A stretch of 63,973 bases of DNA, filler included, from Hyphochytrium catenoides (Eukaryota; Protista; Hyphochytriomycota), in NCBI GenBank assembly GCA_900088475.1. It is 7 parts of 7 records of this genome, joined end to end, with 100 filler letters (N's around TTAATTAATTAA, not from the genome) between each part and the next. Parts side by side here need not be neighbours in the genome. Positions count along the whole stretch, not along the records: positions 1 to 12,911 come from FLMG01003341.1; 6 more parts are not named here. The stretch is one strand, 5' to 3'. The notes beneath the pieces are model-generated. The model saw only the letters and a program-made list of their open reading frames with translations. It was not told the origin of the DNA and did not search any database. A program made the position numbers and the translations under genes. This document shows, piece after piece, positions 1 through 12,400 of the stretch; the stretch's first letter is position 1; each line of letters opens with the position of its first letter.

Positions 1-766
1 GAGAGAGAAAGAGAGAGAAGACGAGAGAGAGAGAGAGAGAGAGGAGAGGAGAGAGAGAGAAAGAGAGAGGAGAGAGGGAGAGAGAGAACGAGCATTTGCA
101 CGAGATAGAAAAGAGAACTAAGATACCCTTGTCCCCCTTTTGAGGATCTTTCAGACCTTTCCTTGTGGACCGTTACTAGTCAACAATGGTATTGCACTCT
201 GAGCTAAGATACCCCTGTCCCCCTTAGAAGGCTGGCTTGCGGAGCCAATACTAAATGGCGGGGATTGGAGGCCGAAGGTAAGGCCTAAGAGTTTGGTAGG
301 AATAGCGGTGCTGATTGGCTGATAAGAGCCTCAGCTGGGCCATAAAATGTTCTAAAATATGGGCTGTACGACTAAACTCAGGTCTGTATATATCTATTGG
401 TATCTAGGATCTAGGTGAGTAATGCAACATTCAATAACTGTAGACCCCTTTTATTTCCTAACTGGGGCCACCTAACCGCTTTGTGGAGTTGATACATACT
501 TATTACGGATCTACGAGATGATTGGGCTCCTTGGGTCGTACTACATCACGGGAAGCGCTTAAGGCAAGGGTTATTGTCCCGGCTCCGTATTACCAGTCAT
601 CTAAGCTTCTTGTCCGGAATAGCAAACCAATATATTACGAATTTAGCTTGAATGCTCATGGTGCCCCATCTCAGACATATTGATGTGCCTCCTGCCCGTA
701 GAGAGGAGGTGGCAAGAGGTAGAAGGCAGAGTTGATAGGAATTGTGGCCCCACAAAGTAGGGTCTC

Positions 767-1957: not shown

Positions 1958-3577
1958 ATGAGGAAATTAGTGCATCCCCTGCCTCCTCTCTTCTTGTCTT
2001 TCTCTCTCCTCTTTCTCTTTTCTCTTCTGCTTCCTCTCCCTCTCATACGCGGGGCTAACTCTATCAGAGCTGACTCGACTGGGTATGAGATGGACGGCAA
2101 GACGCCTCTCTGTTGGGAGAGCTGTGTGACTGTCCCGCTGGCCAAGCAAACAGAGATCGGCTCAGCATTCTCTGAAGTAGAGATCCCCGCCCCTGCAAAC
2201 CCAGAGAAAGACTTTGAGAACTGCCCTTCTTCTCTCAAAAGTGCAGGCTTTGACGACTCTCGCCCTCTCATCCAGGAAGGGCTGGCTCTCTCTCCGTTGA
2301 CGATGCCTGTGCTCTTCTCCTACACTGGCGATGATGTCATCTGCACGAAGGCCGGAGGAGGCTGCCATCAGCTCTCCCACATCAACATCCACGCCTGCGT
2401 GAACTCTGTCTCGCTCTGCCATCCCTTTGTGGCTAATAACAGCAAGCTCTCTACCCATTCTCCTTCTGAAAGCAGAGATCTCCCATCTCTAGGCACTGTC
2501 CGGGTGGACGACCTGAAAATAGTTCTCTCTGAAGGCGTGTACACCGCGATAGGACACTTCCGCTTCAGAAGAAAGACCAATGAGACCACGGTTTGCCAGG
2601 TGGATGCTGCCTCTGCTCTCTCCCTCATTATCAAGCCAAATAAAGACAAGCCGACAGAAGACAAGGCCGCAAAGACAGATGCGCCACCTACCTCTGACGC
2701 GCCGAAGAAGGAAGACGGAGGAACGCCAACATGGGTCTGGGCGGTGGTGGGCATAGGAGGCTTTGTCGCTGTCGCTATCGTGGCTGTTCTGTTCTACTAT
2801 CTGCACCAGAGAGGTAAGGCCTACAATGTGCCTCCAGTGCAGCAGCCTTACTATCACGTTAGCACCGATAATGACCACCACTACCCGGCAGGCGGACGCC
2901 ACAAGGGCCCAGACGTCGACGTATATGGCGCTCCTCCTTTCCCTCCTGAACTAAAGGACTCGCCGCTGGGGAGACAAGAGAGCTATCCTCCTCCTGAGCA
3001 GAGAGAGAGCCGTCCCGGTATGCAAATATCAGGGGAGAGACAGCCGATTGCTCCTCGACTGACTGGCGACTACTATTCAAACCTCGCATTGGCAGAAGAG
3101 GTGCAGGCAACGCCCATTCCCCTTCTGACTGCCACTGCCACTGCTTCTAACCCCATGGCTCAGCAGCAGCAACGCCCTTCCTCGACCTCAGGAGGTGGGG
3201 CCTCTCCGCGGAGAAGAGACAGAGAAACAGGTGGTAGAGAGGTTGTTGGAGGAGGACAACAAGCCGGTGGAGGAGGAGAGACGCTACCAGTCATTGTCAC
3301 TTCGAGAGACTACCGCCCGCCACAGGCCCATGCGGTATCGATAGACGATGAAAGAAAGGGAGAGTTCTCAATCGATAGGCCGGTGCAGCAGCAGGGTGGG
3401 CCGCTACTGGCGCAGCAGCAGCAACAGCAGCCGAGGTACAGCCAGCAACAACAAGGGGGCCAGAGATACAGTCACCAACAACAAGCAGGCGGCCCACGGA
3501 GAGAAGAGGAGGCCTATTATGATGGAGATGGGAGGTTCCACCGCCGCATGGGCTCTGACCTGGAGGTGGAGATGTAA
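1958..3577 (+). CDS. Type I single-pass membrane protein, 539 aa, apparently intronless: signal peptide, Cys/His-rich ectodomain, one TM helix, low-complexity Pro/Gln/Gly/Tyr-rich cytoplasmic tail
   Basis: Long ATG-TAA ORF of normal sequence complexity inside microsatellite flanks. Hydrophobic N-terminus ([23 protein letters not shown]). TM segment WVWAVVGIGGFVAVAIVAVLFYYL followed by basic HQRGK. Function not recognised. Confidence 0.85.
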   Translation: MRKLVHPLPPLFLSFSLLFLFSLLLPLPLIRGANSIRADSTGYEMDGKTPLCWESCVTVPLAKQTEIGSAFSEVEIPAPANPEKDFENCPSSLKSAGFDDSRPLIQEGLALSPLTMPVLFSYTGDDVICTKAGGGCHQLSHINIHACVNSVSLCHPFVANNSKLSTHSPSESRDLPSLGTVRVDDLKIVLSEGVYTAIGHFRFRRKTNETTVCQVDAASALSLIIKPNKDKPTEDKAAKTDAPPTSDAPKKEDGGTPTWVWAVVGIGGFVAVAIVAVLFYYLHQRGKAYNVPPVQQPYYHVSTDNDHHYPAGGRHKGPDVDVYGAPPFPPELKDSPLGRQESYPPPEQRESRPGMQISGERQPIAPRLTGDYYSNLALAEEVQATPIPLLTATATASNPMAQQQQRPSSTSGGGASPRRRDRETGGREVVGGGQQAGGGGETLPVIVTSRDYRPPQAHAVSIDDERKGEFSIDRPVQQQGGPLLAQQQQQQPRYSQQQQGGQRYSHQQQAGGPRREEEAYYDGDGRFHRRMGSDLEVEM

Positions 3578-4599
3578 GCCTTCCTTCCCTCTGGACGCTG
3601 CTGCTTTATTGAAACCAATAGATGGTAGGGGACCATCATAGATCCACCTCAGCATCGTCCCTAAGAGCCAGCAGCCCAGTGATCGCCCTTGATCTGTCGT
3701 AGCAACCTCTCTTCCTTAGCATCTGGATGGCAGAGTCCTCTCTCCTTGTCTCTCCTTTCTTCCTACGCAACAATACCCTTTTCTAAAGCATGAAGCTCCT
3801 CTATCCTTGGCAGAGATAAGGATCGATACTATGACGAAGAGAGAACGGGATCAAGAGCCCGTTAGTAGTCCGTCGTCCCTCAAGACTAGTGGTAGCCTCT
3901 GGCTGCCTTCTTTCACGATAATATCATAAATGTTTGACTAAGCTAGCGTCCCCGCCTTCATTCTCTTCAGTGCATGGCTAAGTTTTTGCAGAGTCGTTGG
4001 CAGAGCACTCATGCCGAGAGAGAGAGGGTCCCCAGAGCAAGGCACCAGGAGGGTGGAGTTACAGGCGTCTGCGGTGTGGACAACGAGGAGAACAAAGATG
4101 AAGAAAGAGCAGATCCAAGACCTTTCTTTCTCAACGTTGTTGCTAGTAGTAGGCTCCTTATTATTTGTCTCTTCCACATAGAGACACACTATGGATACAG
4201 CAGGTAAAGCGCTAGCCATGGATCACGTGGGTGATGATGTTTCTTTAAAGAAGCTACGGACAAGAAGGAGAAGCGGTAAAGTTCAAGACGAGAGAAGAGC
4301 GAGTGAGGAAGGATAAGAATAAGTTCTCCCGGAGACGTCCCTGGGTAGCAGGTCTTTCATTATGACGTACGTGCACCAGCAGTGTTGAGAGAGAAGACTG
4401 ACCGAGCCTCTGCCGGGCTTCTCTCTCTTCGCTCTCTCTCATTCGCTCCCTCTCTCTCTTCTCTTTCTCAATCTCTCTCTCTTCTTGTCTCCTCTCTACC
4501 GTCTTCTCTCTGTGCCCCTCTCTTTCTCTCTGCCACAGGCACGGAGATGCACAAACAGACAGACTCCTTGTCACCGACAGAACTGGTCTCTCTCTCTCT

Positions 4600-7500
4600 T
4601 CACTGGTGTCTCTTCAGCGTCTTTGCTAGTCTGGCTCCCTTTCTCCACAAGTAGCGAATGAGTCTCTTCTTCTTCTCAGCGTCACAATCCGCAAAAGCAG
4701 GCCGAGGCTTAGGAACCTTCACTCTTTCTGCCTCTATCCTCTTCCTCAGTGCGTGCCTGTACGCCCTTATTATAGGTCCATCATCCTGCTGCTGCAACCC
4801 AGAGAAGAGAACGAGCAGAAGGAAGATGAAACCCATGGAGATGTTTCCCCAGTCATTAGCAGAGAGGTTCAGAGAGGTCAGAATGTAGAATGAAGAGATG
4901 AAGAAGTGCAGGATCATCGCCAGCTCTTCCAATAGATTATCTATGGCGTGCAGGAACGGCCTGTTCCTCAGCTGGGAAATCAGGGCGATAAGCCATAGAA
5001 ACCAGCTCATCATCGAGACAACGACCTTTCTCCCTTGCGTCTCCAAGATAAACGCTAAGACTAACATTTGAACCGTCTTCACGAGCGGCCAGTGCTCGTA
5101 CCCAGGCCTGCAATAGCCTAGAAGCTCATTGTAGCGCCCGGAGTACTGCAAGCGACTGAGCTTCTTTCTGCCGAAGAAGGAGTAGAACAGTCTTCTGCCC
5201 TCAACGGAAGAAGACGACGACGATTGAGAGACAGAGGATGATGCAGTTGCACGGAAGTCTTTCCTGCATTCTCTCCAGGTGAACGTGCAGGAGACCCACT
5301 TGAGGAGGAGAAGAGCAATGACAGCGAAGAGAAACATTCCTACAGCATTTCCGGTTGCAAACTGAGGGGAGGAAGCTCTAGAGCAGCGGATGCTGGCATC
5401 TCTTAGCAAGACAGAGTGGCCAGACACTGTCTCACAGGTGGTAAGCTGCAAAGCGTAGCGGAAGAGAGGGAACAGAAGAACATGCACGAAGAGCTCGAGG
5501 AGACCCTGCCACGTCTTCTGACGCCATCGCCTTAGCTGGAAAGAGGCCCTTGCTGCCGCCTCCTGAGGAGATGAGGAGCAAACTTCTGCTGCTTCGTTGG
5601 CCTTAAGGGCTACGCCACCAGAAGAAGCGGCACCGACTGCCGCAGAGGAGAGAGAGGAAGAGCCTGCTTTCCCTCCCTTCTGCTGGTGGTGAAGCAGGCC
5701 TTTGACCAGCATCCGCTTCACATCCCTAACATCCGTGATTCCCTTCCGCGTCATGAGCCAGAGGAATAAGCCAGAGACGGTCAGGAAGGTCAGTAGCCCG
5801 CCCAGAAGCAGACCAAGCTCAAAGTAAATGTGATCTTGCAAGTGTCCATAGCCATAGAAGCCGCAGTCATACAGCGCATCAGGGCCTGTCCCATTCCCTG
5901 TCGGTCCCGACGTCAGGACAGGCGGTATTTCAAAGTTCCAGATCTCCAGAATGGCAAAGACAGAGCGCTTTGTTGTTGGGGACCTTTGAGAAAGAGCGAA
6001 CTGGGCTTGGAGAGCGTAGAGAAGGATAATCCACGGCGCGCGGGTGTCATTGACCTTAAGGTAGAGTGCGGCAGAGCAGAGAGACACGATGATCACGGTG
6101 AGGGTGATCACTAATGTTTTGATGGCATTCCCAGTGCTTCTGCAGATTTCTGGAAGTTGGCAGCGGGTGCCGATCTTCACATACCCTGAAGCGCATCCCA
6201 TACAGAGAAGAGAAGAGCTGTCGTACTCAGACGCACAGCCACCAACTGTCCCAAAGGCAGAGCTCTCATTTTCTCCCCGGGAGCCCACACAGAAACCCGG
6301 TTGACAGGCATAGATGGAGCTCTCTAGCAGGCCAGAGTACACAGCGGGGTCGGTGACATTGTCGGCTGACACTTGGAGAATCTGGCTCTGGACGTCGGCC
6401 TTGTCAATCCAGATATCTCTATAGACGAACAGCTCCTGCTTGCCCATACATCGTAACCTCCCGTTGAACTCTGCGCAAGAGAGACACATCTTTCCATCAA
6501 AGCCAAAGGATCCTAGCTGACAGTCTACACAGGCACCGGAGCTGGCCCGCTGTTGCCCAGGCTTACACTCGTGAAAGGGGCAGCTCATCTTGTTCATCTT
6601 CGTGGAGAAGAAGTCTCTGCCGCACTGAAAAGCAGGCCCGTCTTTGCAGGTGTCGGGACAGCAGTCTCCCCCGTCATAAAGACAGGCAGGAACATTGTTC
6701 TCAGGGTCACACCATCCATCTCCAGCCCACTCTGGTCGGGCACAGCCAGACTTCTCCATCGTCCCAGCAGCAGCGCCACTTTGAGAAGAAATAGAAGACG
6801 CGTTGCTAGGGCAGACGTCAGCAAAGGAGCACTTGACTGCCGCAGCGTTGCTTTTGATGACAAATCTTGGACCGGAGAGGATATCCCGGTCAAGGATCTT
6901 CTGTCCTGTTAACAGCTGCAGGCGGAGGAGTTGCACAGGGAGATAACCATAGAAGTTCTGTTGCTGGTCCACCGTGAAGTCCAGTTCTCCCCTGAGGATT
7001 GACTCTACCACGTCGTCAGTCACGTCAAAGGAGCCAAGACGCACAGAGGTCAGGCGATTCTCTTGCAGGAGAAACTGCCTGGTGCTCTCATAGACACCGG
7101 AACAGCACACGAAGATCACATCGAGCGCCGGGTCGTTATCAAAGATCTGTTTGAGCTGATTCGCGTTCTGCAGCGCGTCGTCAAAGGCGGCATAGACCTT
7201 TGTGGTCACATTATTATCGAAGCCGATCGCAAAGTTGTCGCATCGCGCCTTCCTCAAGAGGAACGAGAGAGAAGGTTAGAAGAGAGAAAGCCCACGAAAG
7301 CGTAGGATTTCTAGAGGAAGTCTAGTGGATGTTGGAAGAAGAGGAAGAAGCGAGGATGACAGGATCAAAAAAAGAAAGGTGGTTGTGGTTTGGAAAGCCA
7401 AGGAGGCGTGGACTGAGAGAAGACAACAAAGTTAAAAGAAACCGAGAGAGAAAGAGATGGAGAGAAACGAAGAGGGGGAAAGGGAGAGAGAAAGAGAGAG

Positions 7501-9403
7501 GGAGGCGTCGTGGGGAGGTCGAGGGAGGGAGAGACCAACAAGAGAAAGAGAGAGAGACAACATAGGGAGAGAGAGAGAACACACAGCGAGCGAGCGAGAA
7601 CGCAGAAAGACAGAGAGAGAAGAGAAGAAAGAAACGGCGAGAGAGCAAAAAGAAAGAGAAAGCACCAACAAATAGTTAGCGTGGCCAGGGAGCCTAATAG
7701 GTTGAGCATCATCTTACCTTGGTAAAGCTCAAGTCATTAATATAGAGACAGATCGCTTTCTGTCCGCCCGAAGCTTTGAGCCTTCGTCCCGCCTCCACAG
7801 AAGCATCCACATCAAACATTCCCATGTAAGAGAAGGGAAGGCCGGGCTCTGAGAGATCAGCGCCTGCGTTGATGAGAAAGAGAGGCAGCTGTGCCTCTTT
7901 AAGCTTTGCAATGGCTCCAGACATGGCCTCAGCGCTAGGCACGGACCCAATAAGCCCATCTATTGACGGCCCAGAGGACGTACCGTCAGAGCCAGCAGCC
8001 ATCAGTCTCTCGATGATCCCGCCCTGCGAGACAGAGTTGGTCGTGTCCATAGCGAAGTAGAAGCGGAACTGATCAGAGGCAGAGCAATTGCCGGTGGAGC
8101 TAGTGCAGTCGGAGAAAGAGAAGGACGTGTCCTTCACTCCTCGTTGCAGGCCGTCCAGCACAGACTGCCAGAAGCTCCACTGTCTCCCACCGTGCAGCAC
8201 AGTCGCCATTCTCACGTTCTCCTCTGTCAGTCTCTCTTTCTTCCCCTTCTCTCCCGCTCTCTCTCTATCTTCTACATCTGGAAGAGAAAACAGGAGTCTC
8301 GGGCCAGTCGTGAGAAGCTTCTGAGAAGGAATCTGGTGCCTAAGACCAAACTCTACAGCTAACACCATGCCCAGGTAGCCTTGAAGGTAGGGCTGCTGGT
8401 CTACCACAAGGAACTTGAAGGGAGAAGACGAAGAGAAAGAAGAGAGAAGAAGAGACGACGATGAAGAACTGCCGCCGCTCTCTCTCAGGTACTTGGAAGA
8501 GACAGTGTCCAGGTCAAAGGTCACGACTCCCACTTTCTTCTGTCTCATAAGCCCTTCAAAAGCCGTCACAACCTTGACCAACGTCCTTCGCCCAGCAGAA
8601 ACCACCCAGTCATGAGGGCTCGAGACGGAGCCGTCGCCGTCTTTGACAAGAACAGTAGCGTTGAAGGCGACCTGCTGGTTGTCAATAGAGGCGAGAGAGA
8701 GAAGGGAGAACGTGGCTGTGGGAGAGAGAGAGAGATAGAATGTCCTTACTTCCTGGCAGCGCTGCATCTGGTCGACATATTGAGCGCCATCCACCACGCA
8801 GAGGAGGTTCTTTCCTCCTTCTTGGGTCACTTGTTCTGCTATCTTCTGCCCTGCTAAGGTGTGGTTCTGTCCTAAGTGGACCTCGGTCACGCCCTGAGTG
8901 TAGGACTCAATGAGAGAGAGAGAGAGAATGCGATAGCCTCTCTCTCTCATACTCTGTATCCCGTCTTCTACGCCTGGCGGTACGACGGTGAGGATGAAGT
9001 TCTTCTCCGGAGGAAAGAGAGAGGTGTCGTTCAGAGATTGGAGAGAAGAGAGAATGAGTCTGCTGTCATTTCCATTGAACTTGTCTCTCTTCTCACTCTC
9101 CAAGACAGAGTGAACAACTCCTATGACTTTGACGCGCTTTGACGCCTCAAGAAAGCCTTGTCGGAGCGCGTAAGCGACGTCATCGGTGGTGGGATCTGCA
9201 TGAAGAAGAAGGTGGACACGAGCTTGGTGGTAAGGTTTGCATTGGCAGGTGACAGTGGCCGAAGCGGGGGAGAGAAAGAGAGAGAAAGACGAGAAGTGTG
9301 GCCCGGGAGAAGAGGTGGAAGCGAAGAGGATGAAGAGCCACGAGAGAAAGAAGCCACGAGAGAAGAAGGAAGAGAACAATGCTGTTCTCTCTCTTCCGCG
9401 CAT
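4600..9403 (-). CDS. Receptor-like membrane protein, ~1444 aa, 2 exons (9403-7718, 7248-4600): signal region, two tandem periplasmic-binding-protein type 1 (sugar ABC SBP-like) domains, LNR/Notch-like repeat, Cys-rich stalk, ~9 TM helices
   Basis: ORFs 7709-9403 and 4600-7257 join in frame through a phase-0 intron (7717-7249). The donor is AAG|GTAAG; the acceptor has a CTAAC branch site, a pyrimidine tract and AAG|. Spliced junction: ...INDLSFTK|ARCDNFAIG. SBP motifs occur twice: VDQQPYLQGYLG...TTGPRLL, and HGGRQWSFWQSVLDG...IDGLIGSVP...PLFLINAG...GSFD...VDQQQNFYGYLPV...SGPRFVIKSNA. LNR-like motif: CARPEWAGDGWCDPENNVPACLYDGGDCC. About nine hydrophobic segments in the C-terminal ~450 aa. Confidence 0.85.
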
Positions 9404-9524
9404 GATGGGTGCTGCTCAATCGCCGGCAACAGACGAGTTACGTCCAGCTTGGCACCAGAAGAGGCCCAAAATAAGGAACGTTAAGACTTTCCGACCTTGG
9501 CAGGCCGCAGATTATATGAGGGAA

Positions 9525-9729: not shown

Positions 9730-9785
<56 letters not shown>

Positions 9786-10556
9786 ATCTCTCTCTTCTCT
9801 CTCGTTACCCGCTCTTTCCCTGCTCGCCGACTCTTTTTATTTGGTCCTCTCCGCCTTCCTCTCTCTCTCCGTCCTCTTTTGCAGCAGTTGCCGCCGTCTG
9901 CTGCTTTCTTCTGCAAATGGAAGCGGCCCTCCCGCTATCTTTCTTCTCTTTCTCTCTCGTCTCTCCGACTTTTCCTTCTCTTCTCTTTTTCCTGCTTCTC
10001 CTCTTAGTGGAAGGCTGGCTCGTAGTTCACAAGCAATCTCATCTCACTAAGTCTTTACTTTGACATACTGCCCGTCAGCACACTCGCCTTAGCTTCTCCT
10101 TGTAGTCAAAAGAAAGGGGCGGCCAGGGGTGGAAGGAGAAAAATGAGAGAGAGACAGAAAGAGAGAGAGAGGGAGAGAGAGAGAGAGAAAGAAGGAAAGA
10201 TCGAAACGTGTCGGCTCTCCCTCATGGAAGCCTATAACGCACTAAGATTTCTAACAGTTATCTCCAGTCGTTAACTTCTCCTGATCTTATTCCGTCATCT
10301 TCTAGGTAAGGCTGCTCATTCATTTCCTCTCTCTTTTGTGTCCTTTCTCTCTCTCTCTCTCTTCTCTTTTCTCTCTTTCCCTAGACTCCAGCAGCTCTGG
10401 TTAGGGAGAGGAAACAGAAGAAGAAGAAGCCCAACAAGGCGCCGGAGAACGGGCTTCCTTTCGCATCCTGGCTGGCATGAGATGCAGCCAAACGGCCGTC
10501 CTTTGGTTGGTTCACTTCTTGGTCATGGAACTGTCAGACGCAGCCCCTCAAAGGAA

Positions 10557-10600
<44 letters not shown>

Positions 10601-11309
10601 TTGCCGTTGGTCTTCCCTCCCAGCTGGGCGTGTGTTGGTGTCACACCAGAGCTTCTCTTGGAAGGAAGGAAGGAAGGAAGGAAGGAAGAAAGGGAAAGAG
10701 AGAAGCACGATGGGCTCAAGAGAAGAGCAACAAGGACCACCAGCGCGTGGGGAACTGGGAGATCCGGGAACAACGTGGGAGCCAGCGAAGAGGAAAGAGA
10801 GAGAAAGAAGAAGAGAGGGAATTGAGGTGTATGTGGGAGAAAGAGAGAGAGCGGAGAGAGAGAGAGAGAGAGAGAGGTTGGGCGTTGGGGGTTTTGGGGG
10901 TGGAAGGGAAAAACCGAGAGGCAGGAGAAAGAGAGAGAGAGAAAGAGAGAGAGAGAAAGAGAGAGCGAGAGAGTGAGGGGAGGGAGAGAGAGAGGAGGTA
11001 ACGAGAGGGAGGCAGGGAGACAGAGAGAGGAGCGAAGAGAGAGAGAGAGAGCGGGAGGGAGAGGGAATGAGGGGTAGAGCAGGAGGAGAGAGCGAGAGAA
11101 GAGCATACATTCATGCAGGGAAACGAAACTGTCACTAAACTTCAAGAAGATTCTTTCCAAAGTCCAAAGACCACTAGTCAGAAATCAAACGATACATATT
11201 AGGGATCATACTAGGTAAAGCGTCCATATCATAAATTTGCTCGACAGCTTGGCACAACAAGGATGGTGGCCCAAGAGATCTTTTGTGTGTGTGTGGGGAG
11301 AGAGAGAGC

Positions 11310-11347
<38 letters not shown>

Positions 11348-12316
11348 GAGAGAGAAAGAAAGAGAGAGAGAGAGAGAGAGGACGCGAGAGAGAGGGAAAG
11401 AGAGAGAGCGAGAGGAAGAGAGGAGATGAGAGAGACAAGGGAGAGAGACACACAGAGAACGAGGGAGAGGAAACGACAAAGAAGAGAGAGGAAGTGGAAG
11501 ATATAAACCGAAGAGAGTTGAGAAGGTACCTGGAGAGAGAAGTGCAAACAACGGCGGTTTGGGCTTCGCCTTCGCTTCTCCTTCGAACACCGTCGTCCCC
11601 TTTTCAAAGCAACGGCGTACAAATAAATTTGCCTCTCGGGCTGCGAGGTTGCTTTCTCTTCTCTTTCTCTCTCTCACTCTCTCTCTCTCTCTCTGCCCTC
11701 TCTCTCTCTCTCTTCGTTTTTACAGTCGTCTACGAAGCTCTTCGTTCTGGTTCAGATTGTCAGTTGGCTTAAGAGGCGACTTCTCGCTTGTACGTCAACC
11801 AGGCTGCTCTGCAGAGAGAAAAGAAATGGAGAGGAACAGAGAGAGAGAGAGAGAGACGCAGAGAGAGAGAGGGAACGTTCAACAGAGAGCCATTGAAGCT
11901 GTACCATAGGGAGGAGAGAACAAACAGGAAAAACTGAGGAGAGAGAGAAAGAACCACCTCACTATCGAAAGAGAAGACAGAGCGGCGAGGCGGAGAAAGG
12001 AAAATATAGAAGCGGAGGAGGAAGGGAGAGAGTCAAGAAAAGACCTTATAGAACGACCTCTTAGCAGAAAATAAAGACAGGCTCTTCTCGTCCCCAACTT
12101 TCATTCTTTCTCTCTCTCTCTCTCTCACTCCCCCTCTCTCTCTCTCTCTCTGTGCTCGCTCTCTTTCTCTTTCCTTTCTTTGTCCCTTTCTTTCCACACC
12201 TTGCCACCACGACTATCCTGTCCACTTAGAACTAAGTGCTCGCTCGCTCCTGCTAACCTGGTCGCCGCTTCTCTTGCCCCTAGCCTCTCCGACAATCAAT
12301 CATCTTTGGCCCTCCC

Positions 12317-12365
<49 letters not shown>

Positions 12366-12400
12366 GCTGTCTCTCTCTGCCTCTGTCTCTCCCCTGTGTC
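9730..12400. repeat. Dense (CT)n/(GA)n simple and cryptic microsatellite field (similar tracts at 1-90, 760-1170, 1360-1690, 14090-14350, 15560-25168, 37300-37680)
   Basis: Long purine-only or pyrimidine-only dinucleotide tracts are directly visible. They produce the many poly-SL and poly-ER pseudo-ORFs in the track. Confidence 0.95.

What the first reader, a model, noticed from the sequence alone, without database searches (positions are those of the whole stretch)
4600..9403. Candidate novel eukaryotic solute sensor: two bacterial-type sugar-binding domains + LNR module + Cys stalk + ~9-TM membrane domain in one protein
Seen: the ORF track shows two separate proteins, but a 469-nt phase-0 intron joins them into one ~1444-aa chain. 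The chain has a leader, two full copies of a periplasmic-binding-protein motif set (each ending DQQxxxxGYL...GPR), a GDGWCD..NN...C.YDGGDCC module, further Cys repeats and about nine hydrophobic helices. Established: these motifs characterise type 1 substrate-binding proteins of bacterial sugar/polyol ABC importers, which eukaryotes generally lack. SBP domains fused to class C-type 7TM receptors have been reported in early-diverging fungi. Inference: this is a different solution, a tandem Venus-flytrap ectodomain coupled to a non-class-C membrane module and acting as a surface receptor for sugars or related solutes. I do not know of a description of this architecture.
Basis: partly seen in the sequence, partly recalled or inferred. 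Interest (0 to 1): 0.88.

Follow-up and report, generated by a model that had tools for sequence, protein, structure and literature searches.

The report
Sugar-binding-domain receptor with nine-helix membrane module
One two-exon gene of an unidentified protist encodes a 1444-residue membrane protein that joins two bacterial-type sugar-binding domains to a nine-helix membrane domain, so it is a plausible but untested sensor for small solutes.

Summary
On the minus strand, exon 1 (9403-7718) and exon 2 (7248-4600) are joined by a 469-nt GT-AG phase-0 intron into a 1444-aa protein.

The join is precise. The second sugar-binding domain aligns as one unbroken domain (aa 386-701, 120.7 bits) straight across the junction. 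Only one other in-frame GT-AG pair exists, and it deletes conserved residues.

Variants in two DNA runs give 28 synonymous against 7 non-synonymous changes (pN/pS about 0.08). Indels inside the coding sequence are in frame. No RNA run could be listed.

The parts, in order:
- a signal-like leader
- a degenerate sugar-binding domain (SBP1)
- a well-conserved one (SBP2), of the bacterial CUT2 / 4ru1 / rhizopine-like subfamily
- one LNR module
- a cysteine-rich stalk
- nine membrane helices, N-terminus outside and C-terminus inside
- a basic tail

The membrane domain has no sequence relative in 1.84 billion proteins. Only language-model features link it to PF06011 (Flc/Pkd2 "TRP-like") and ephrin-receptor-like multi-pass proteins, which share the layout of apicomplexan CRMPs.

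My best reading is a solute sensor built on that chassis. It is a new variant of a known kind, and its function is inferred.

The parts
7718..9403 (-). Coding exon 1 (aa 1-562). The ATG at 9403 is the first start codon after an in-frame stop.
   Evidence: ORF and translation. All 11 listed variants in this exon are synonymous, and a 3-nt deletion at 8445 is in frame. The 1-nt indels lie only upstream, at 9471 and 9488.
7249..7717 (-). Intron: 469 nt, GT..AG, phase 0, 78% C+T. An in-frame stop follows two codons after the donor.
   Evidence: This is the only in-frame GT-AG pair that keeps the SBP2 homology. In run X2, the variant at 7253 removes the competing out-of-frame AG but leaves the AG at 7250-7249 intact.
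4600..7248 (-). Coding exon 2 (aa 563-1444, plus the stop at 4600-4602).
   Evidence: Listed variants: 17 synonymous and 7 non-synonymous. A 15-nt in-frame deletion lies in the cytosolic low-complexity loop.
9314..9403 (-). Signal-peptide-like leader (about aa 1-30: a basic start followed by FFLSWLFILFA).
   Evidence: Read directly from the sequence, plus the hydropathy peak at aa 9-27. No signal-peptide predictor was run.
8264..9241 (-). SBP1 (aa 55-380): a complete but degenerate PBP type I sugar-SBP domain with a serine-rich insertion at about aa 303-330.
   Evidence: hhalign gives 98.2% probability over 270 columns. The AlphaFold2 model has pLDDT 73.6, and the best Foldseek match in the PDB is 4ru1 at E 1e-14. 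It keeps 13 of 21 invariant columns. Pfam Peripla_BP_4 is below threshold.
7718..8248 (-). SBP2, N-terminal part (aa 386-562), encoded in exon 1.
6832..7248 (-). SBP2, C-terminal part (aa 563-701), encoded in exon 2.
   Evidence: Across the whole of SBP2, 18 of 21 invariant columns are kept, and identity to bacterial SBPs is 23-31% over about 310 residues.
6643..6750 (-). LNR (Notch/Lin-12) module, aa 729-764, with six cysteines.
   Evidence: Pfam PF00066 scores 23.1 bits against a cut-off of 21.2. It also matches the LNR repeats of P0001 and P0003-P0007.
6130..6642 (-). Cysteine-rich stalk (aa 765-935) with two C-x2-C-x2-G-[FY] motifs (CVDCQLGSF and CMGCASGY).
   Evidence: Sequence and cysteine positions. 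The only Pfam hit is a non-significant TNFR-like one (E 0.029). Resemblance to ephrin-receptor-like repeats rests on the motif and on Atlas features.
4795..6114 (-). Nine-helix membrane domain (aa 941-1380), with two long basic cytosolic loops (aa 1059-1143 and 1217-1282).
   Evidence: Hydropathy, model helices and the positive-inside count. No sequence relatives were found. Atlas features place it nearest to PF06011 and ephrin-receptor-like clusters.
4603..4794 (-). Basic cytosolic tail (aa 1381-1444; 20 K+R in 64 residues).

Best explanation
Shown. This is one intact two-exon nuclear gene under purifying selection. It encodes a 1444-aa membrane protein.

The parts run in this order:
- a signal-like leader
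- SBP1, a degenerate bacterial-type sugar/polyol-binding domain
- SBP2, a well-conserved domain of the same kind (CUT2 family, near 4ru1 and the rhizopine SBP)
- one LNR module
- a cysteine-rich stalk
- nine membrane helices, with the N-terminus outside and the C-terminus inside
- a basic cytosolic tail

Inferred.
- The SBP domains came from bacteria and were grafted onto a protist receptor chassis: variable ectodomain, cysteine-rich stalk, nine helices.
- That chassis is used by apicomplexan CRMPs and by PF06011 (Flc/Pkd2-type) and ephrin-receptor-like proteins.
- A small sugar-like or inositol-like solute closes SBP2.
- SBP1 acts as a partner or scaffold lobe.
- The movement passes through the rigid, disulfide-rich LNR and stalk to the nine-helix domain.
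- That domain then either changes ion (Ca2+) flux or signals through partner proteins and its basic cytosolic loops and tail.
For: One gene:
- SBP2 is continuous across the junction.
- The junction is the only homology-preserving in-frame GT-AG pair.
- An unspliced message would stop two codons into the intron, leaving half a domain.
- Exon 2 alone has no start codon or leader before the middle of the SBP2 C-lobe.

Gene in use:
- 28 synonymous against 7 non-synonymous variants, pN/pS about 0.08.
- Coding indels of 15 nt and 3 nt; 1-nt indels only upstream of the ATG.

Not a bacterial contaminant or assembly chimera:
- A separately assembled contig of run X2, carrying its own variants, spans the membrane domain, stalk, LNR, SBP2 C-lobe and part of the intron (4832-7452).

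SBP identity:
-.
- All 100 nearest Atlas clusters for exon 1 are bacterial Peripla_BP_4.
- SBP2 keeps 18 of 21 invariant columns and SBP1 keeps 13.

Topology:
- 49 K+R inside against 8 outside. Cysteines and N-x-S/T sites sit in the loops predicted to be outside.

Chassis:
- Atlas features score 0.92-0.95 with 206-215 of 256 shared features to PF06011 and ephrin-receptor-like multi-pass clusters.
- 9 of the 10 best named hits agree for the membrane-only query.
- CRMPs are defined by cysteine-rich modules plus nine helices under variable ectodomains, N-terminus out and C-terminus in (PMC9815656; PMC9670195).
- S. pombe Pkd2 has an extracellular domain, nine helices and a cytosolic tail (10.1101/2022.08.11.503631).

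Precedents for SBPs as sensors:
- XylFII-LytS appears among the fold matches.
- SBP-fold domains sit on family-3 GPCR, guanylate cyclase, histidine kinase and chemoreceptor proteins in AlphaFold DB.
Against: - There is no transcript evidence; no RNA run could be listed.
- No ortholog was found anywhere, so conservation beyond this species is unknown.
- The membrane domain has no Pfam hit even at E 10. It has no phmmer hit in 1.84 billion proteins, a library that probably holds CRMP and PF06011 members.
- The chassis link therefore rests on layout and language-model features. Recognition for the membrane-only query was 2260, just under the tool's 2300 mark.
- The single-sequence model of the stalk and membrane domain was unusable, at pLDDT 45.
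- Ligand, location and signalling are all untested.
Confidence: 0.55

Rival explanations
1. Host-contact or glycan-binding protein of the CRMP type. The SBP domains act as lectin-like or protein-contact modules on a parasite surface complex that licenses secretion or invasion, and they do not sense free solutes.
For: CRMP ectodomains carry swapped-in binding modules (MAR, Kringle, C-type lectin) on a stalk and nine-helix core of the same layout. SBP1 has lost much of the conserved pocket signature. The DNA has a coccidian-like style, with GA/CT microsatellites and low-complexity inserts.
Against: SBP2 keeps 18 of 21 invariant residues of the small-molecule-binding bacterial relatives. The organism is unidentified, so a parasitic lifestyle is not shown. 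No sequence similarity to any CRMP was detected.
Confidence: 0.2
2. Tethered-SBP uptake system. The SBPs capture substrate and hand it to the nine-helix domain, which acts as a permease. This would resemble bacterial ABC importers whose substrate-binding domains are fused in tandem to the membrane subunit (GlnPQ, from my own knowledge).
For: These SBPs come from a family whose ancestral job is delivery to importers. Tandem SBPs in one chain also occur in bacteria (P0002).
Against: The membrane domain matches no transporter family. No ABC ATPase or permease lies in the window. A long, rigid LNR and cysteine stalk between the SBP and the membrane suits signal relay better than docking onto a pore.
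Confidence: 0.12
3. Two independent genes: a secreted SBP protein from the upstream ORF and a separate membrane protein from the downstream ORF.
For: A mechanical ORF list shows two ORFs, and there is no RNA evidence for splicing.
Against: The upstream ORF would end in the middle of SBP2. The downstream ORF would begin in the middle of the same domain, with no methionine or leader. The two halves align to adjacent profile positions (132 and 144) and score 120.7 bits as one domain. Donor, acceptor and polypyrimidine tract are canonical.
Confidence: 0.03
4. A decaying fusion (pseudogene), or an assembly chimera between bacterial contaminant DNA and eukaryotic DNA.
For: No ortholog was found in any database.
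Against: Both reading frames are intact and pN/pS is about 0.08, with in-frame indels. An intron lies inside the SBP domain. Contigs of two DNA runs with different haplotypes bridge the SBP and membrane parts.
Confidence: 0.02

Closest known systems
Bacterial CUT2-family monosaccharide/inositol-type substrate-binding proteins (PDB 4ru1; NCBIfam NF052284 rhizopine SBP; Pfam PF13407 Peripla_BP_4)
   Same: Both domains have the two-lobe PBP type I fold and the family signature: HG..FW, lCv...RC, FD, DQQ..(Q)GY and GP. SBP2 aligns end to end with these proteins.
   Different: - Identity is only 23-31%.
- There are two copies in one chain, with low-complexity insertions.
- The coding sequence is interrupted by an intron.
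- The domains are fused to a eukaryotic membrane protein rather than secreted beside an ABC importer.
- They score far below the rhizopine equivalog cut-off (52-60 bits against 420), so ligand identity cannot be read off.
Cysteine repeat modular proteins (CRMPs) of Apicomplexa and ciliates
   Same: The layout matches: signal peptide, swappable ligand-binding ectodomain, cysteine-rich modules directly before nine membrane helices, N-terminus outside and C-terminus cytosolic. CRMPs are also proposed to act as sensors (PMC9670195; PMC9815656).
   Different: No sequence similarity was detected, and no CRMP sequence could be compared directly. No CRMP is described with SBP or LNR domains. At 1444 aa this protein is also smaller (from my own memory of CRMP sizes).
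PF06011 'TRP-like' nine-helix proteins (yeast Flc1-3, S. pombe Pkd2, Aspergillus TrpR) and the protist proteins that combine ephrin-receptor-like repeats with this membrane domain
   Same: These are the nearest neighbours by language-model features, for the stalk plus membrane domain and for the membrane domain alone. They share the plan of extracellular domain, nine helices and cytosolic tail. They are linked to Ca2+ flux (PMC9727806; PMC8618638 and PMC9600462).
   Different: hmmscan finds no PF06011 match even at E 10. The fungal members carry an ML-like lipid-binding ectodomain, not SBPs.
Eukaryotic Venus-flytrap receptors (class C GPCRs, ionotropic glutamate receptors, receptor guanylate cyclases), including SBP-fold domains on family-3 GPCR and guanylate-cyclase proteins in AlphaFold DB
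   Same: A PBP type I clamshell ectodomain is coupled to a membrane signalling module. Class C receptors also have a cysteine-rich spacer between the two. AlphaFold DB entries A0A3P3Y5F1 and A0A1X2GAX9 are among the best fold matches to SBP1.
   Different: The membrane module has nine helices and no 7tm_3, channel-pore or cyclase domain. The SBPs are of the sugar (Peripla_BP_4) type rather than the ANF_receptor type. There are two in tandem, followed by an LNR.

Membership tests
PBP type I sugar SBP (Pfam PF13407 Peripla_BP_4 / CUT2) | Full-length profile match covering both lobes | tested here: met
   SBP2 scores 120.7 bits over profile positions 24-315 of 323. SBP1 gives hhalign 98.2% over 270 columns. 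The Pfam scores on the separate ORFs fall below the 35.1-bit cut-off (27.3 and 33.9), partly because the intron splits SBP2 between them.
PBP type I sugar SBP (Pfam PF13407 Peripla_BP_4 / CUT2) | Two alpha/beta lobes joined by a hinge (fold) | tested here: met
   The SBP1 model has pLDDT 73.6. All 50 listed Foldseek PDB matches are sugar SBPs or LacI-type domains (one a de novo designed allose binder), with TM-scores of 0.59-0.77. The model used an alignment of bacterial SBPs, so it leans towards this fold. SBP2 could not be folded because no single reference spans the spliced sequence.
PBP type I sugar SBP (Pfam PF13407 Peripla_BP_4 / CUT2) | Conserved residues of the subfamily retained (taken here as a stand-in for the pocket) | tested here: inconclusive
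   SBP2 keeps 18 of 21 invariant columns. SBP1 keeps 13, having lost the F-W and A..P..N positions of the N-lobe. That these columns line the pocket is my inference from ribose-binding protein. No binding test was done.
ABC-importer substrate-binding protein (functional role) | A free or lipid-anchored SBP working with a cognate ABC permease and ATPase | tested here: not met
   The domains are covalently fused to a nine-helix protein. No ABC component lies in the 12.9-kb piece.
LNR / Notch domain (PF00066) | Profile score above the curated cut-off, six cysteines, and an acidic/Asn Ca2+-site motif | tested here: met
   23.1 bits against a cut-off of 21.2. The cysteines are C731, C742, C751, C758, C759 and C763. 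The motif is DGWCDPENN...YDGGDCC.
Class C (family 3) GPCR | 7tm_3 seven-helix domain with an ANF_receptor flytrap and an NCD3G spacer | tested here: not met
   None of these Pfam families is hit at E up to 1-10. The topology has nine helices.
CRMP (cysteine repeat modular protein) | Cysteine-rich EGF-like or ephrin-receptor-like modules directly before nine membrane helices, N-terminus out and C-terminus in | tested here: met
   There are two C-x2-C-x2-G-[FY] modules in aa 765-935, then nine helices with 49 K+R inside against 8 outside. This compares layout only.
CRMP (cysteine repeat modular protein) | Sequence or profile homology of the conserved core to known CRMPs | tested here: inconclusive
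   phmmer of the membrane domain against 1.84 billion proteins gave no real hit. CRMP authors report very low local conservation. No CRMP sequence was available for a profile comparison.
PF06011 TRP-like (Flc/Pkd2) membrane domain | Match to the Pfam profile | tested here: not met
   There are no Pfam families for aa 930-1444 at E up to 10. Only language-model features point here: scores of 0.92-0.95 with 206-215 shared features.
PF06011 TRP-like (Flc/Pkd2) membrane domain | Nine-helix fold superposable on Pkd2/Flc models | tested here: inconclusive
   The single-sequence AlphaFold2 model has pLDDT 45 and pTM 0.30. Its Atlas fold search gave TM-scores of about 0.2 to unrelated proteins.

The most novel reading that the evidence does not exclude
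The nine-helix domain is a PF06011-type cation (Ca2+) channel gated directly by a sugar or inositol binding to the tethered bacterial SBP. That would be a ligand-gated channel assembled independently of ionotropic glutamate receptors, from a horizontally acquired bacterial clamshell and a protist channel chassis.
Probability: 0.12. Interest if true: 0.85.

Novelty: new variant of a known kind. Interest (0 to 1): 0.6.

Why it matters
Few ligand-to-receptor pairs are known for protist surface proteins. For the CRMP / nine-helix class in particular, no activating ligand is known.

Here the ectodomain belongs to a family whose ligands are small, cheap and easy to screen: monosaccharides, inositols and polyols. 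The conserved copy, SBP2, can be expressed on its own.

If the membrane domain does belong to the CRMP or PF06011 class, this protein would offer a way to ask how that chassis turns an extracellular binding event into a signal.

It is also a clean case of bacterial domains being domesticated. They have acquired an intron and low-complexity inserts and are held under purifying selection inside a eukaryotic receptor.

Tried and rejected
1. RNA evidence. The search for RNA runs listed none. The 'any' search listed only DNA runs (after a busy error). The junction therefore rests on homology and population data.
3. Orthologs and the same architecture. Word-index searches with exon 2, exon 1 and the last six helices returned only bacterial SBPs and unrelated LNR-repeat proteins, or nothing (one search was a parameter slip). 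Full phmmer of the membrane domain gave one hit, to a low-complexity repeat. A metagenome scan gave nothing. An exact-product look-up was not on record.
4. Family of the membrane domain. Pfam at E 10 gave nothing, and the stalk gave only a non-significant TNFR-like hit. The single-sequence AlphaFold2 model was too poor to use, and its Atlas fold search was meaningless, as expected.
5. Ligand of 4ru1. The literature search for that code found nothing relevant. From memory the entry holds an inositol, but I did not verify this and do not use it as evidence.
6. Inheritance of the tandem as a unit from a bacterial tandem SBP such as P0002. This is not supported. SBP2 is closest to P0002 domain 1 and SBP1 is weakly closest to domain 2, which is the opposite order. 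SBP1 and SBP2 are not each other's closest relatives.
7. Rfam found no RNA gene in the piece.
8. The organism could not be identified. 'Coccidian-like' is only an impression, from the GA/CT microsatellites, the CT-rich intron and the low-complexity inserts.

Full report
**What is in the sequence**

The piece has about 52% G+C. It is littered with GA/CT microsatellites. That style, together with the low-complexity inserts in its proteins, reminds me of tissue-cyst-forming coccidia. This is only an impression, and the organism stayed unidentified.

Two long ORFs lie on the minus strand, at 7709..9403 (564 aa) and 4600..7257 (885 aa). Between them sits a CT-rich stretch bounded by AAG|GTAAGA and a polypyrimidine tract ending ...GAGGAAG|GCG. 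Splicing 7718 to 7248 removes 469 nt in phase 0 and gives a 1444-aa protein.

**Is the join real?**

Four independent lines say yes.

1. A profile for the rhizopine SBP matches exon 1 aa 449-553 at profile positions 36-132. It matches exon 2 aa 2-139 at positions 144-281. The two ORFs therefore carry adjacent halves of one domain.
2. An HMM built locally from seven bacterial SBPs aligns spliced aa 386-701 as a single domain of 120.7 bits, running straight through K562|A563. The conserved "RC" falls right after the junction.
3. I enumerated every GT..AG pair that keeps the frame open. Only two exist, and the other deletes 27 conserved residues.
4. Without splicing, the upstream frame stops two codons into the intron and leaves half a domain. 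The downstream ORF has no methionine or leader before the middle of the SBP2 C-lobe.

RNA support could not be obtained, because no RNA run was listed.

**Is it a gene in use?**

Contigs of two DNA runs of the same labelled organism differ from the window. Of the 35 listed coding differences, 28 are synonymous and 7 are not. This gives pN/pS of about 0.08. Both exons are covered, including the membrane domain.

Coding indels are 3 nt and 15 nt. Both fall in low-complexity loops. The only 1-nt indels lie upstream of the ATG.

A contig of run X2 carrying its own variants spans 4832-7452. It therefore covers the membrane domain, stalk, LNR, SBP2 C-lobe and part of the intron on one molecule. That excludes a chimera with bacterial DNA. 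Nine further variants were not shown by the tool and are not counted.

**Anatomy**

- **Leader:** about aa 1-30, signal-like.
- **SBP1:** aa 55-380.
  - hhalign against the bacterial profile gives 98.2% probability over 270 columns.
  - An AlphaFold2 model built with a ten-sequence alignment has pLDDT 73.6.
  - All 50 listed PDB fold matches are sugar SBPs or LacI-type domains (one a de novo designed allose binder). The best is 4ru1 at E 1e-14.
  - SBP1 keeps only 13 of the 21 columns that are invariant in the bacterial relatives. It has lost the F-W and A..P..N positions of the N-lobe.
- **SBP2:** aa 386-701.
  - It keeps 18 of the 21 invariant columns.
  - It is 23-31% identical to bacterial SBPs over about 310 residues.
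- **Bacterial relatives:** they group with PDB 4ru1 (300 bits) and with NCBIfam's rhizopine SBP model, but below that model's equivalog cut-off. This is a CUT2 monosaccharide/inositol-type subfamily with no assignable ligand.
- **The two copies:** they are not each other's closest relatives.
- **LNR:** aa 729-764. It has six cysteines and scores above Pfam's cut-off.
- **Stalk:** aa 765-935. It holds about 20 cysteines and two C-x2-C-x2-G-[FY] motifs, but has no significant Pfam hit.
- **Membrane domain:** aa 941-1380.
  - The nine hydrophobic helices give a self-consistent topology, N-terminus out and C-terminus in.
  - There are 49 K+R in the predicted cytosolic segments against 8 outside.
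  - The outside loops carry the cysteines and N-x-S/T sites.
  - Dropping the weak second helix would put the most basic loop outside, so nine helices is the favoured count.
- **Tail:** aa 1381-1444, strongly basic.

**The membrane domain**

By sequence it is an orphan:
- no Pfam family at E 10
- no real hit by phmmer in 1.84 billion representative proteins
- nothing from the word-index search
- nothing in metagenome contigs

A single-sequence AlphaFold2 model was too poor to use (pLDDT 45). Its fold search was meaningless.

The only positive lead is the ESM Atlas feature search. For the stalk plus membrane domain, and again for the membrane domain alone, the nearest clusters are eukaryotic multi-pass proteins. 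They carry PF06011 ("TRP", the fungal Flc/Pkd2 family), PF07699 (ephrin-receptor-like) or both. Scores were 0.92-0.95 with 206-215 of 256 shared features. For the membrane-only query, 9 of the 10 best named hits agree, though its recognition value is just under the tool's mark.

In those clusters the same membrane domain sits under many different ectodomains: LRR, TIG, Chlam_PMP, ephrin-receptor-like repeats. This is the layout that defines apicomplexan and ciliate CRMPs, namely cysteine-rich modules directly before nine helices, with variable binding domains and the N-terminus outside. CRMPs are proposed host sensors that license rhoptry secretion (PMC9670195; PMC9815656). It is also the layout of S. 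pombe Pkd2, which has an extracellular domain, nine helices and a cytosolic tail (10.1101/2022.08.11.503631). Pkd2 becomes Ca2+-permeable on membrane stretch (PMC9727806).

I treat "CRMP / PF06011-like chassis" as a working resemblance, not as membership.

**How it most likely works**

Shown: the gene structure, the domain order, purifying selection and the topology.

Inferred:
- Bacterial SBP domains were acquired and fused to a protist nine-helix chassis.
- A small sugar-like or inositol-like ligand closes SBP2.
- SBP1, with its eroded N-lobe signature, serves as a partner lobe or scaffold.
- The rigid LNR and cysteine stalk carries the movement to the membrane domain.
- The membrane domain changes ion flux, or signals through partners and its long basic cytosolic loops and tail.

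There are precedents for SBPs of this family acting as sensors rather than transport components. The fold matches include XylFII-LytS. They also include AlphaFold DB proteins in which the same fold is fused to family-3 GPCR, guanylate cyclase, histidine kinase and chemoreceptor modules.

**Rivals**

- **CRMP-like host-contact role.** The SBPs would bind glycans or proteins. This is plausible only if the organism is a parasite.
- **Tethered-SBP uptake system.** No transporter signature supports it.
- **Two separate genes.** This is contradicted by the split domain.
- **Pseudogene or chimera.** This is contradicted by selection, the intron and the bridging contigs.

**Novelty**

No paper or database protein with this architecture was found. 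All 100 nearest Atlas clusters to exon 1 are bacterial.

Both ideas behind the protein are known, however. Clamshell ectodomains on eukaryotic receptors are known, and so are swappable ectodomains on a cysteine-stalk nine-helix chassis. I therefore rate it a new variant of a known kind. Its interest is real but moderate. That interest is limited by the missing expression data, the missing orthologs and the unresolved identity of the membrane domain.

Noticed in passing
window 1958-3577 (+): A convergent neighbour ORF of 539 aa. It looks like a type I membrane protein: a hydrophobic leader, a cysteine-containing ectodomain of about 240 aa, one membrane helix (WVWAVVGIGGFVAVAIVAVLFYYL) and a Q/G/P-rich cytosolic tail. 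It has no significant Pfam family (DUF6821 at E 0.13).
   Followed up: partly
window 8300-8438: Run X1 holds two contigs of 139 nt at nearly equal depth (236 and 238). One is identical to the window. The other carries five synonymous differences that run X2 also has. So the sample holds two haplotypes: a mixed population, or a heterozygous diploid stage.
   Followed up: no
window 1-87, 935-1686, 9731-9803, 10925-11713, 12320-12391: There are long imperfect GA/CT microsatellite arrays in all non-coding parts. They produce many spurious 'SLSLSL' and 'ERERER' ORFs on both strands, and very high summed contig depth at 4400-4573 and 7532-7705.
   Followed up: partly
protein P0002 (1081 aa, labelled Anaerolineales bacterium HSG25): This bacterial protein has two tandem Peripla_BP_4 domains (aa 107-333 and 358-656) plus SBP_bac_1-type domains in one chain. 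Its first domain is the best single match to SBP2 (30.5% identity, 103 bits).
   Followed up: partly
protein P0001 (1159 aa, EukProt transcript): This is a subtilisin (Peptidase_S8 with an I9 inhibitor domain) followed by at least seven LNR-like repeats of the same protist flavour (W.GDG.CD..NN...C.YDGGDCC). It shows that this LNR variant is a mobile extracellular module in protists.
   Followed up: no
window 7253: Run X2 has C>A on the plus strand here. This destroys the out-of-frame AG at 7254-7253 but leaves the proposed acceptor AG at 7250-7249 untouched.
   Followed up: partly
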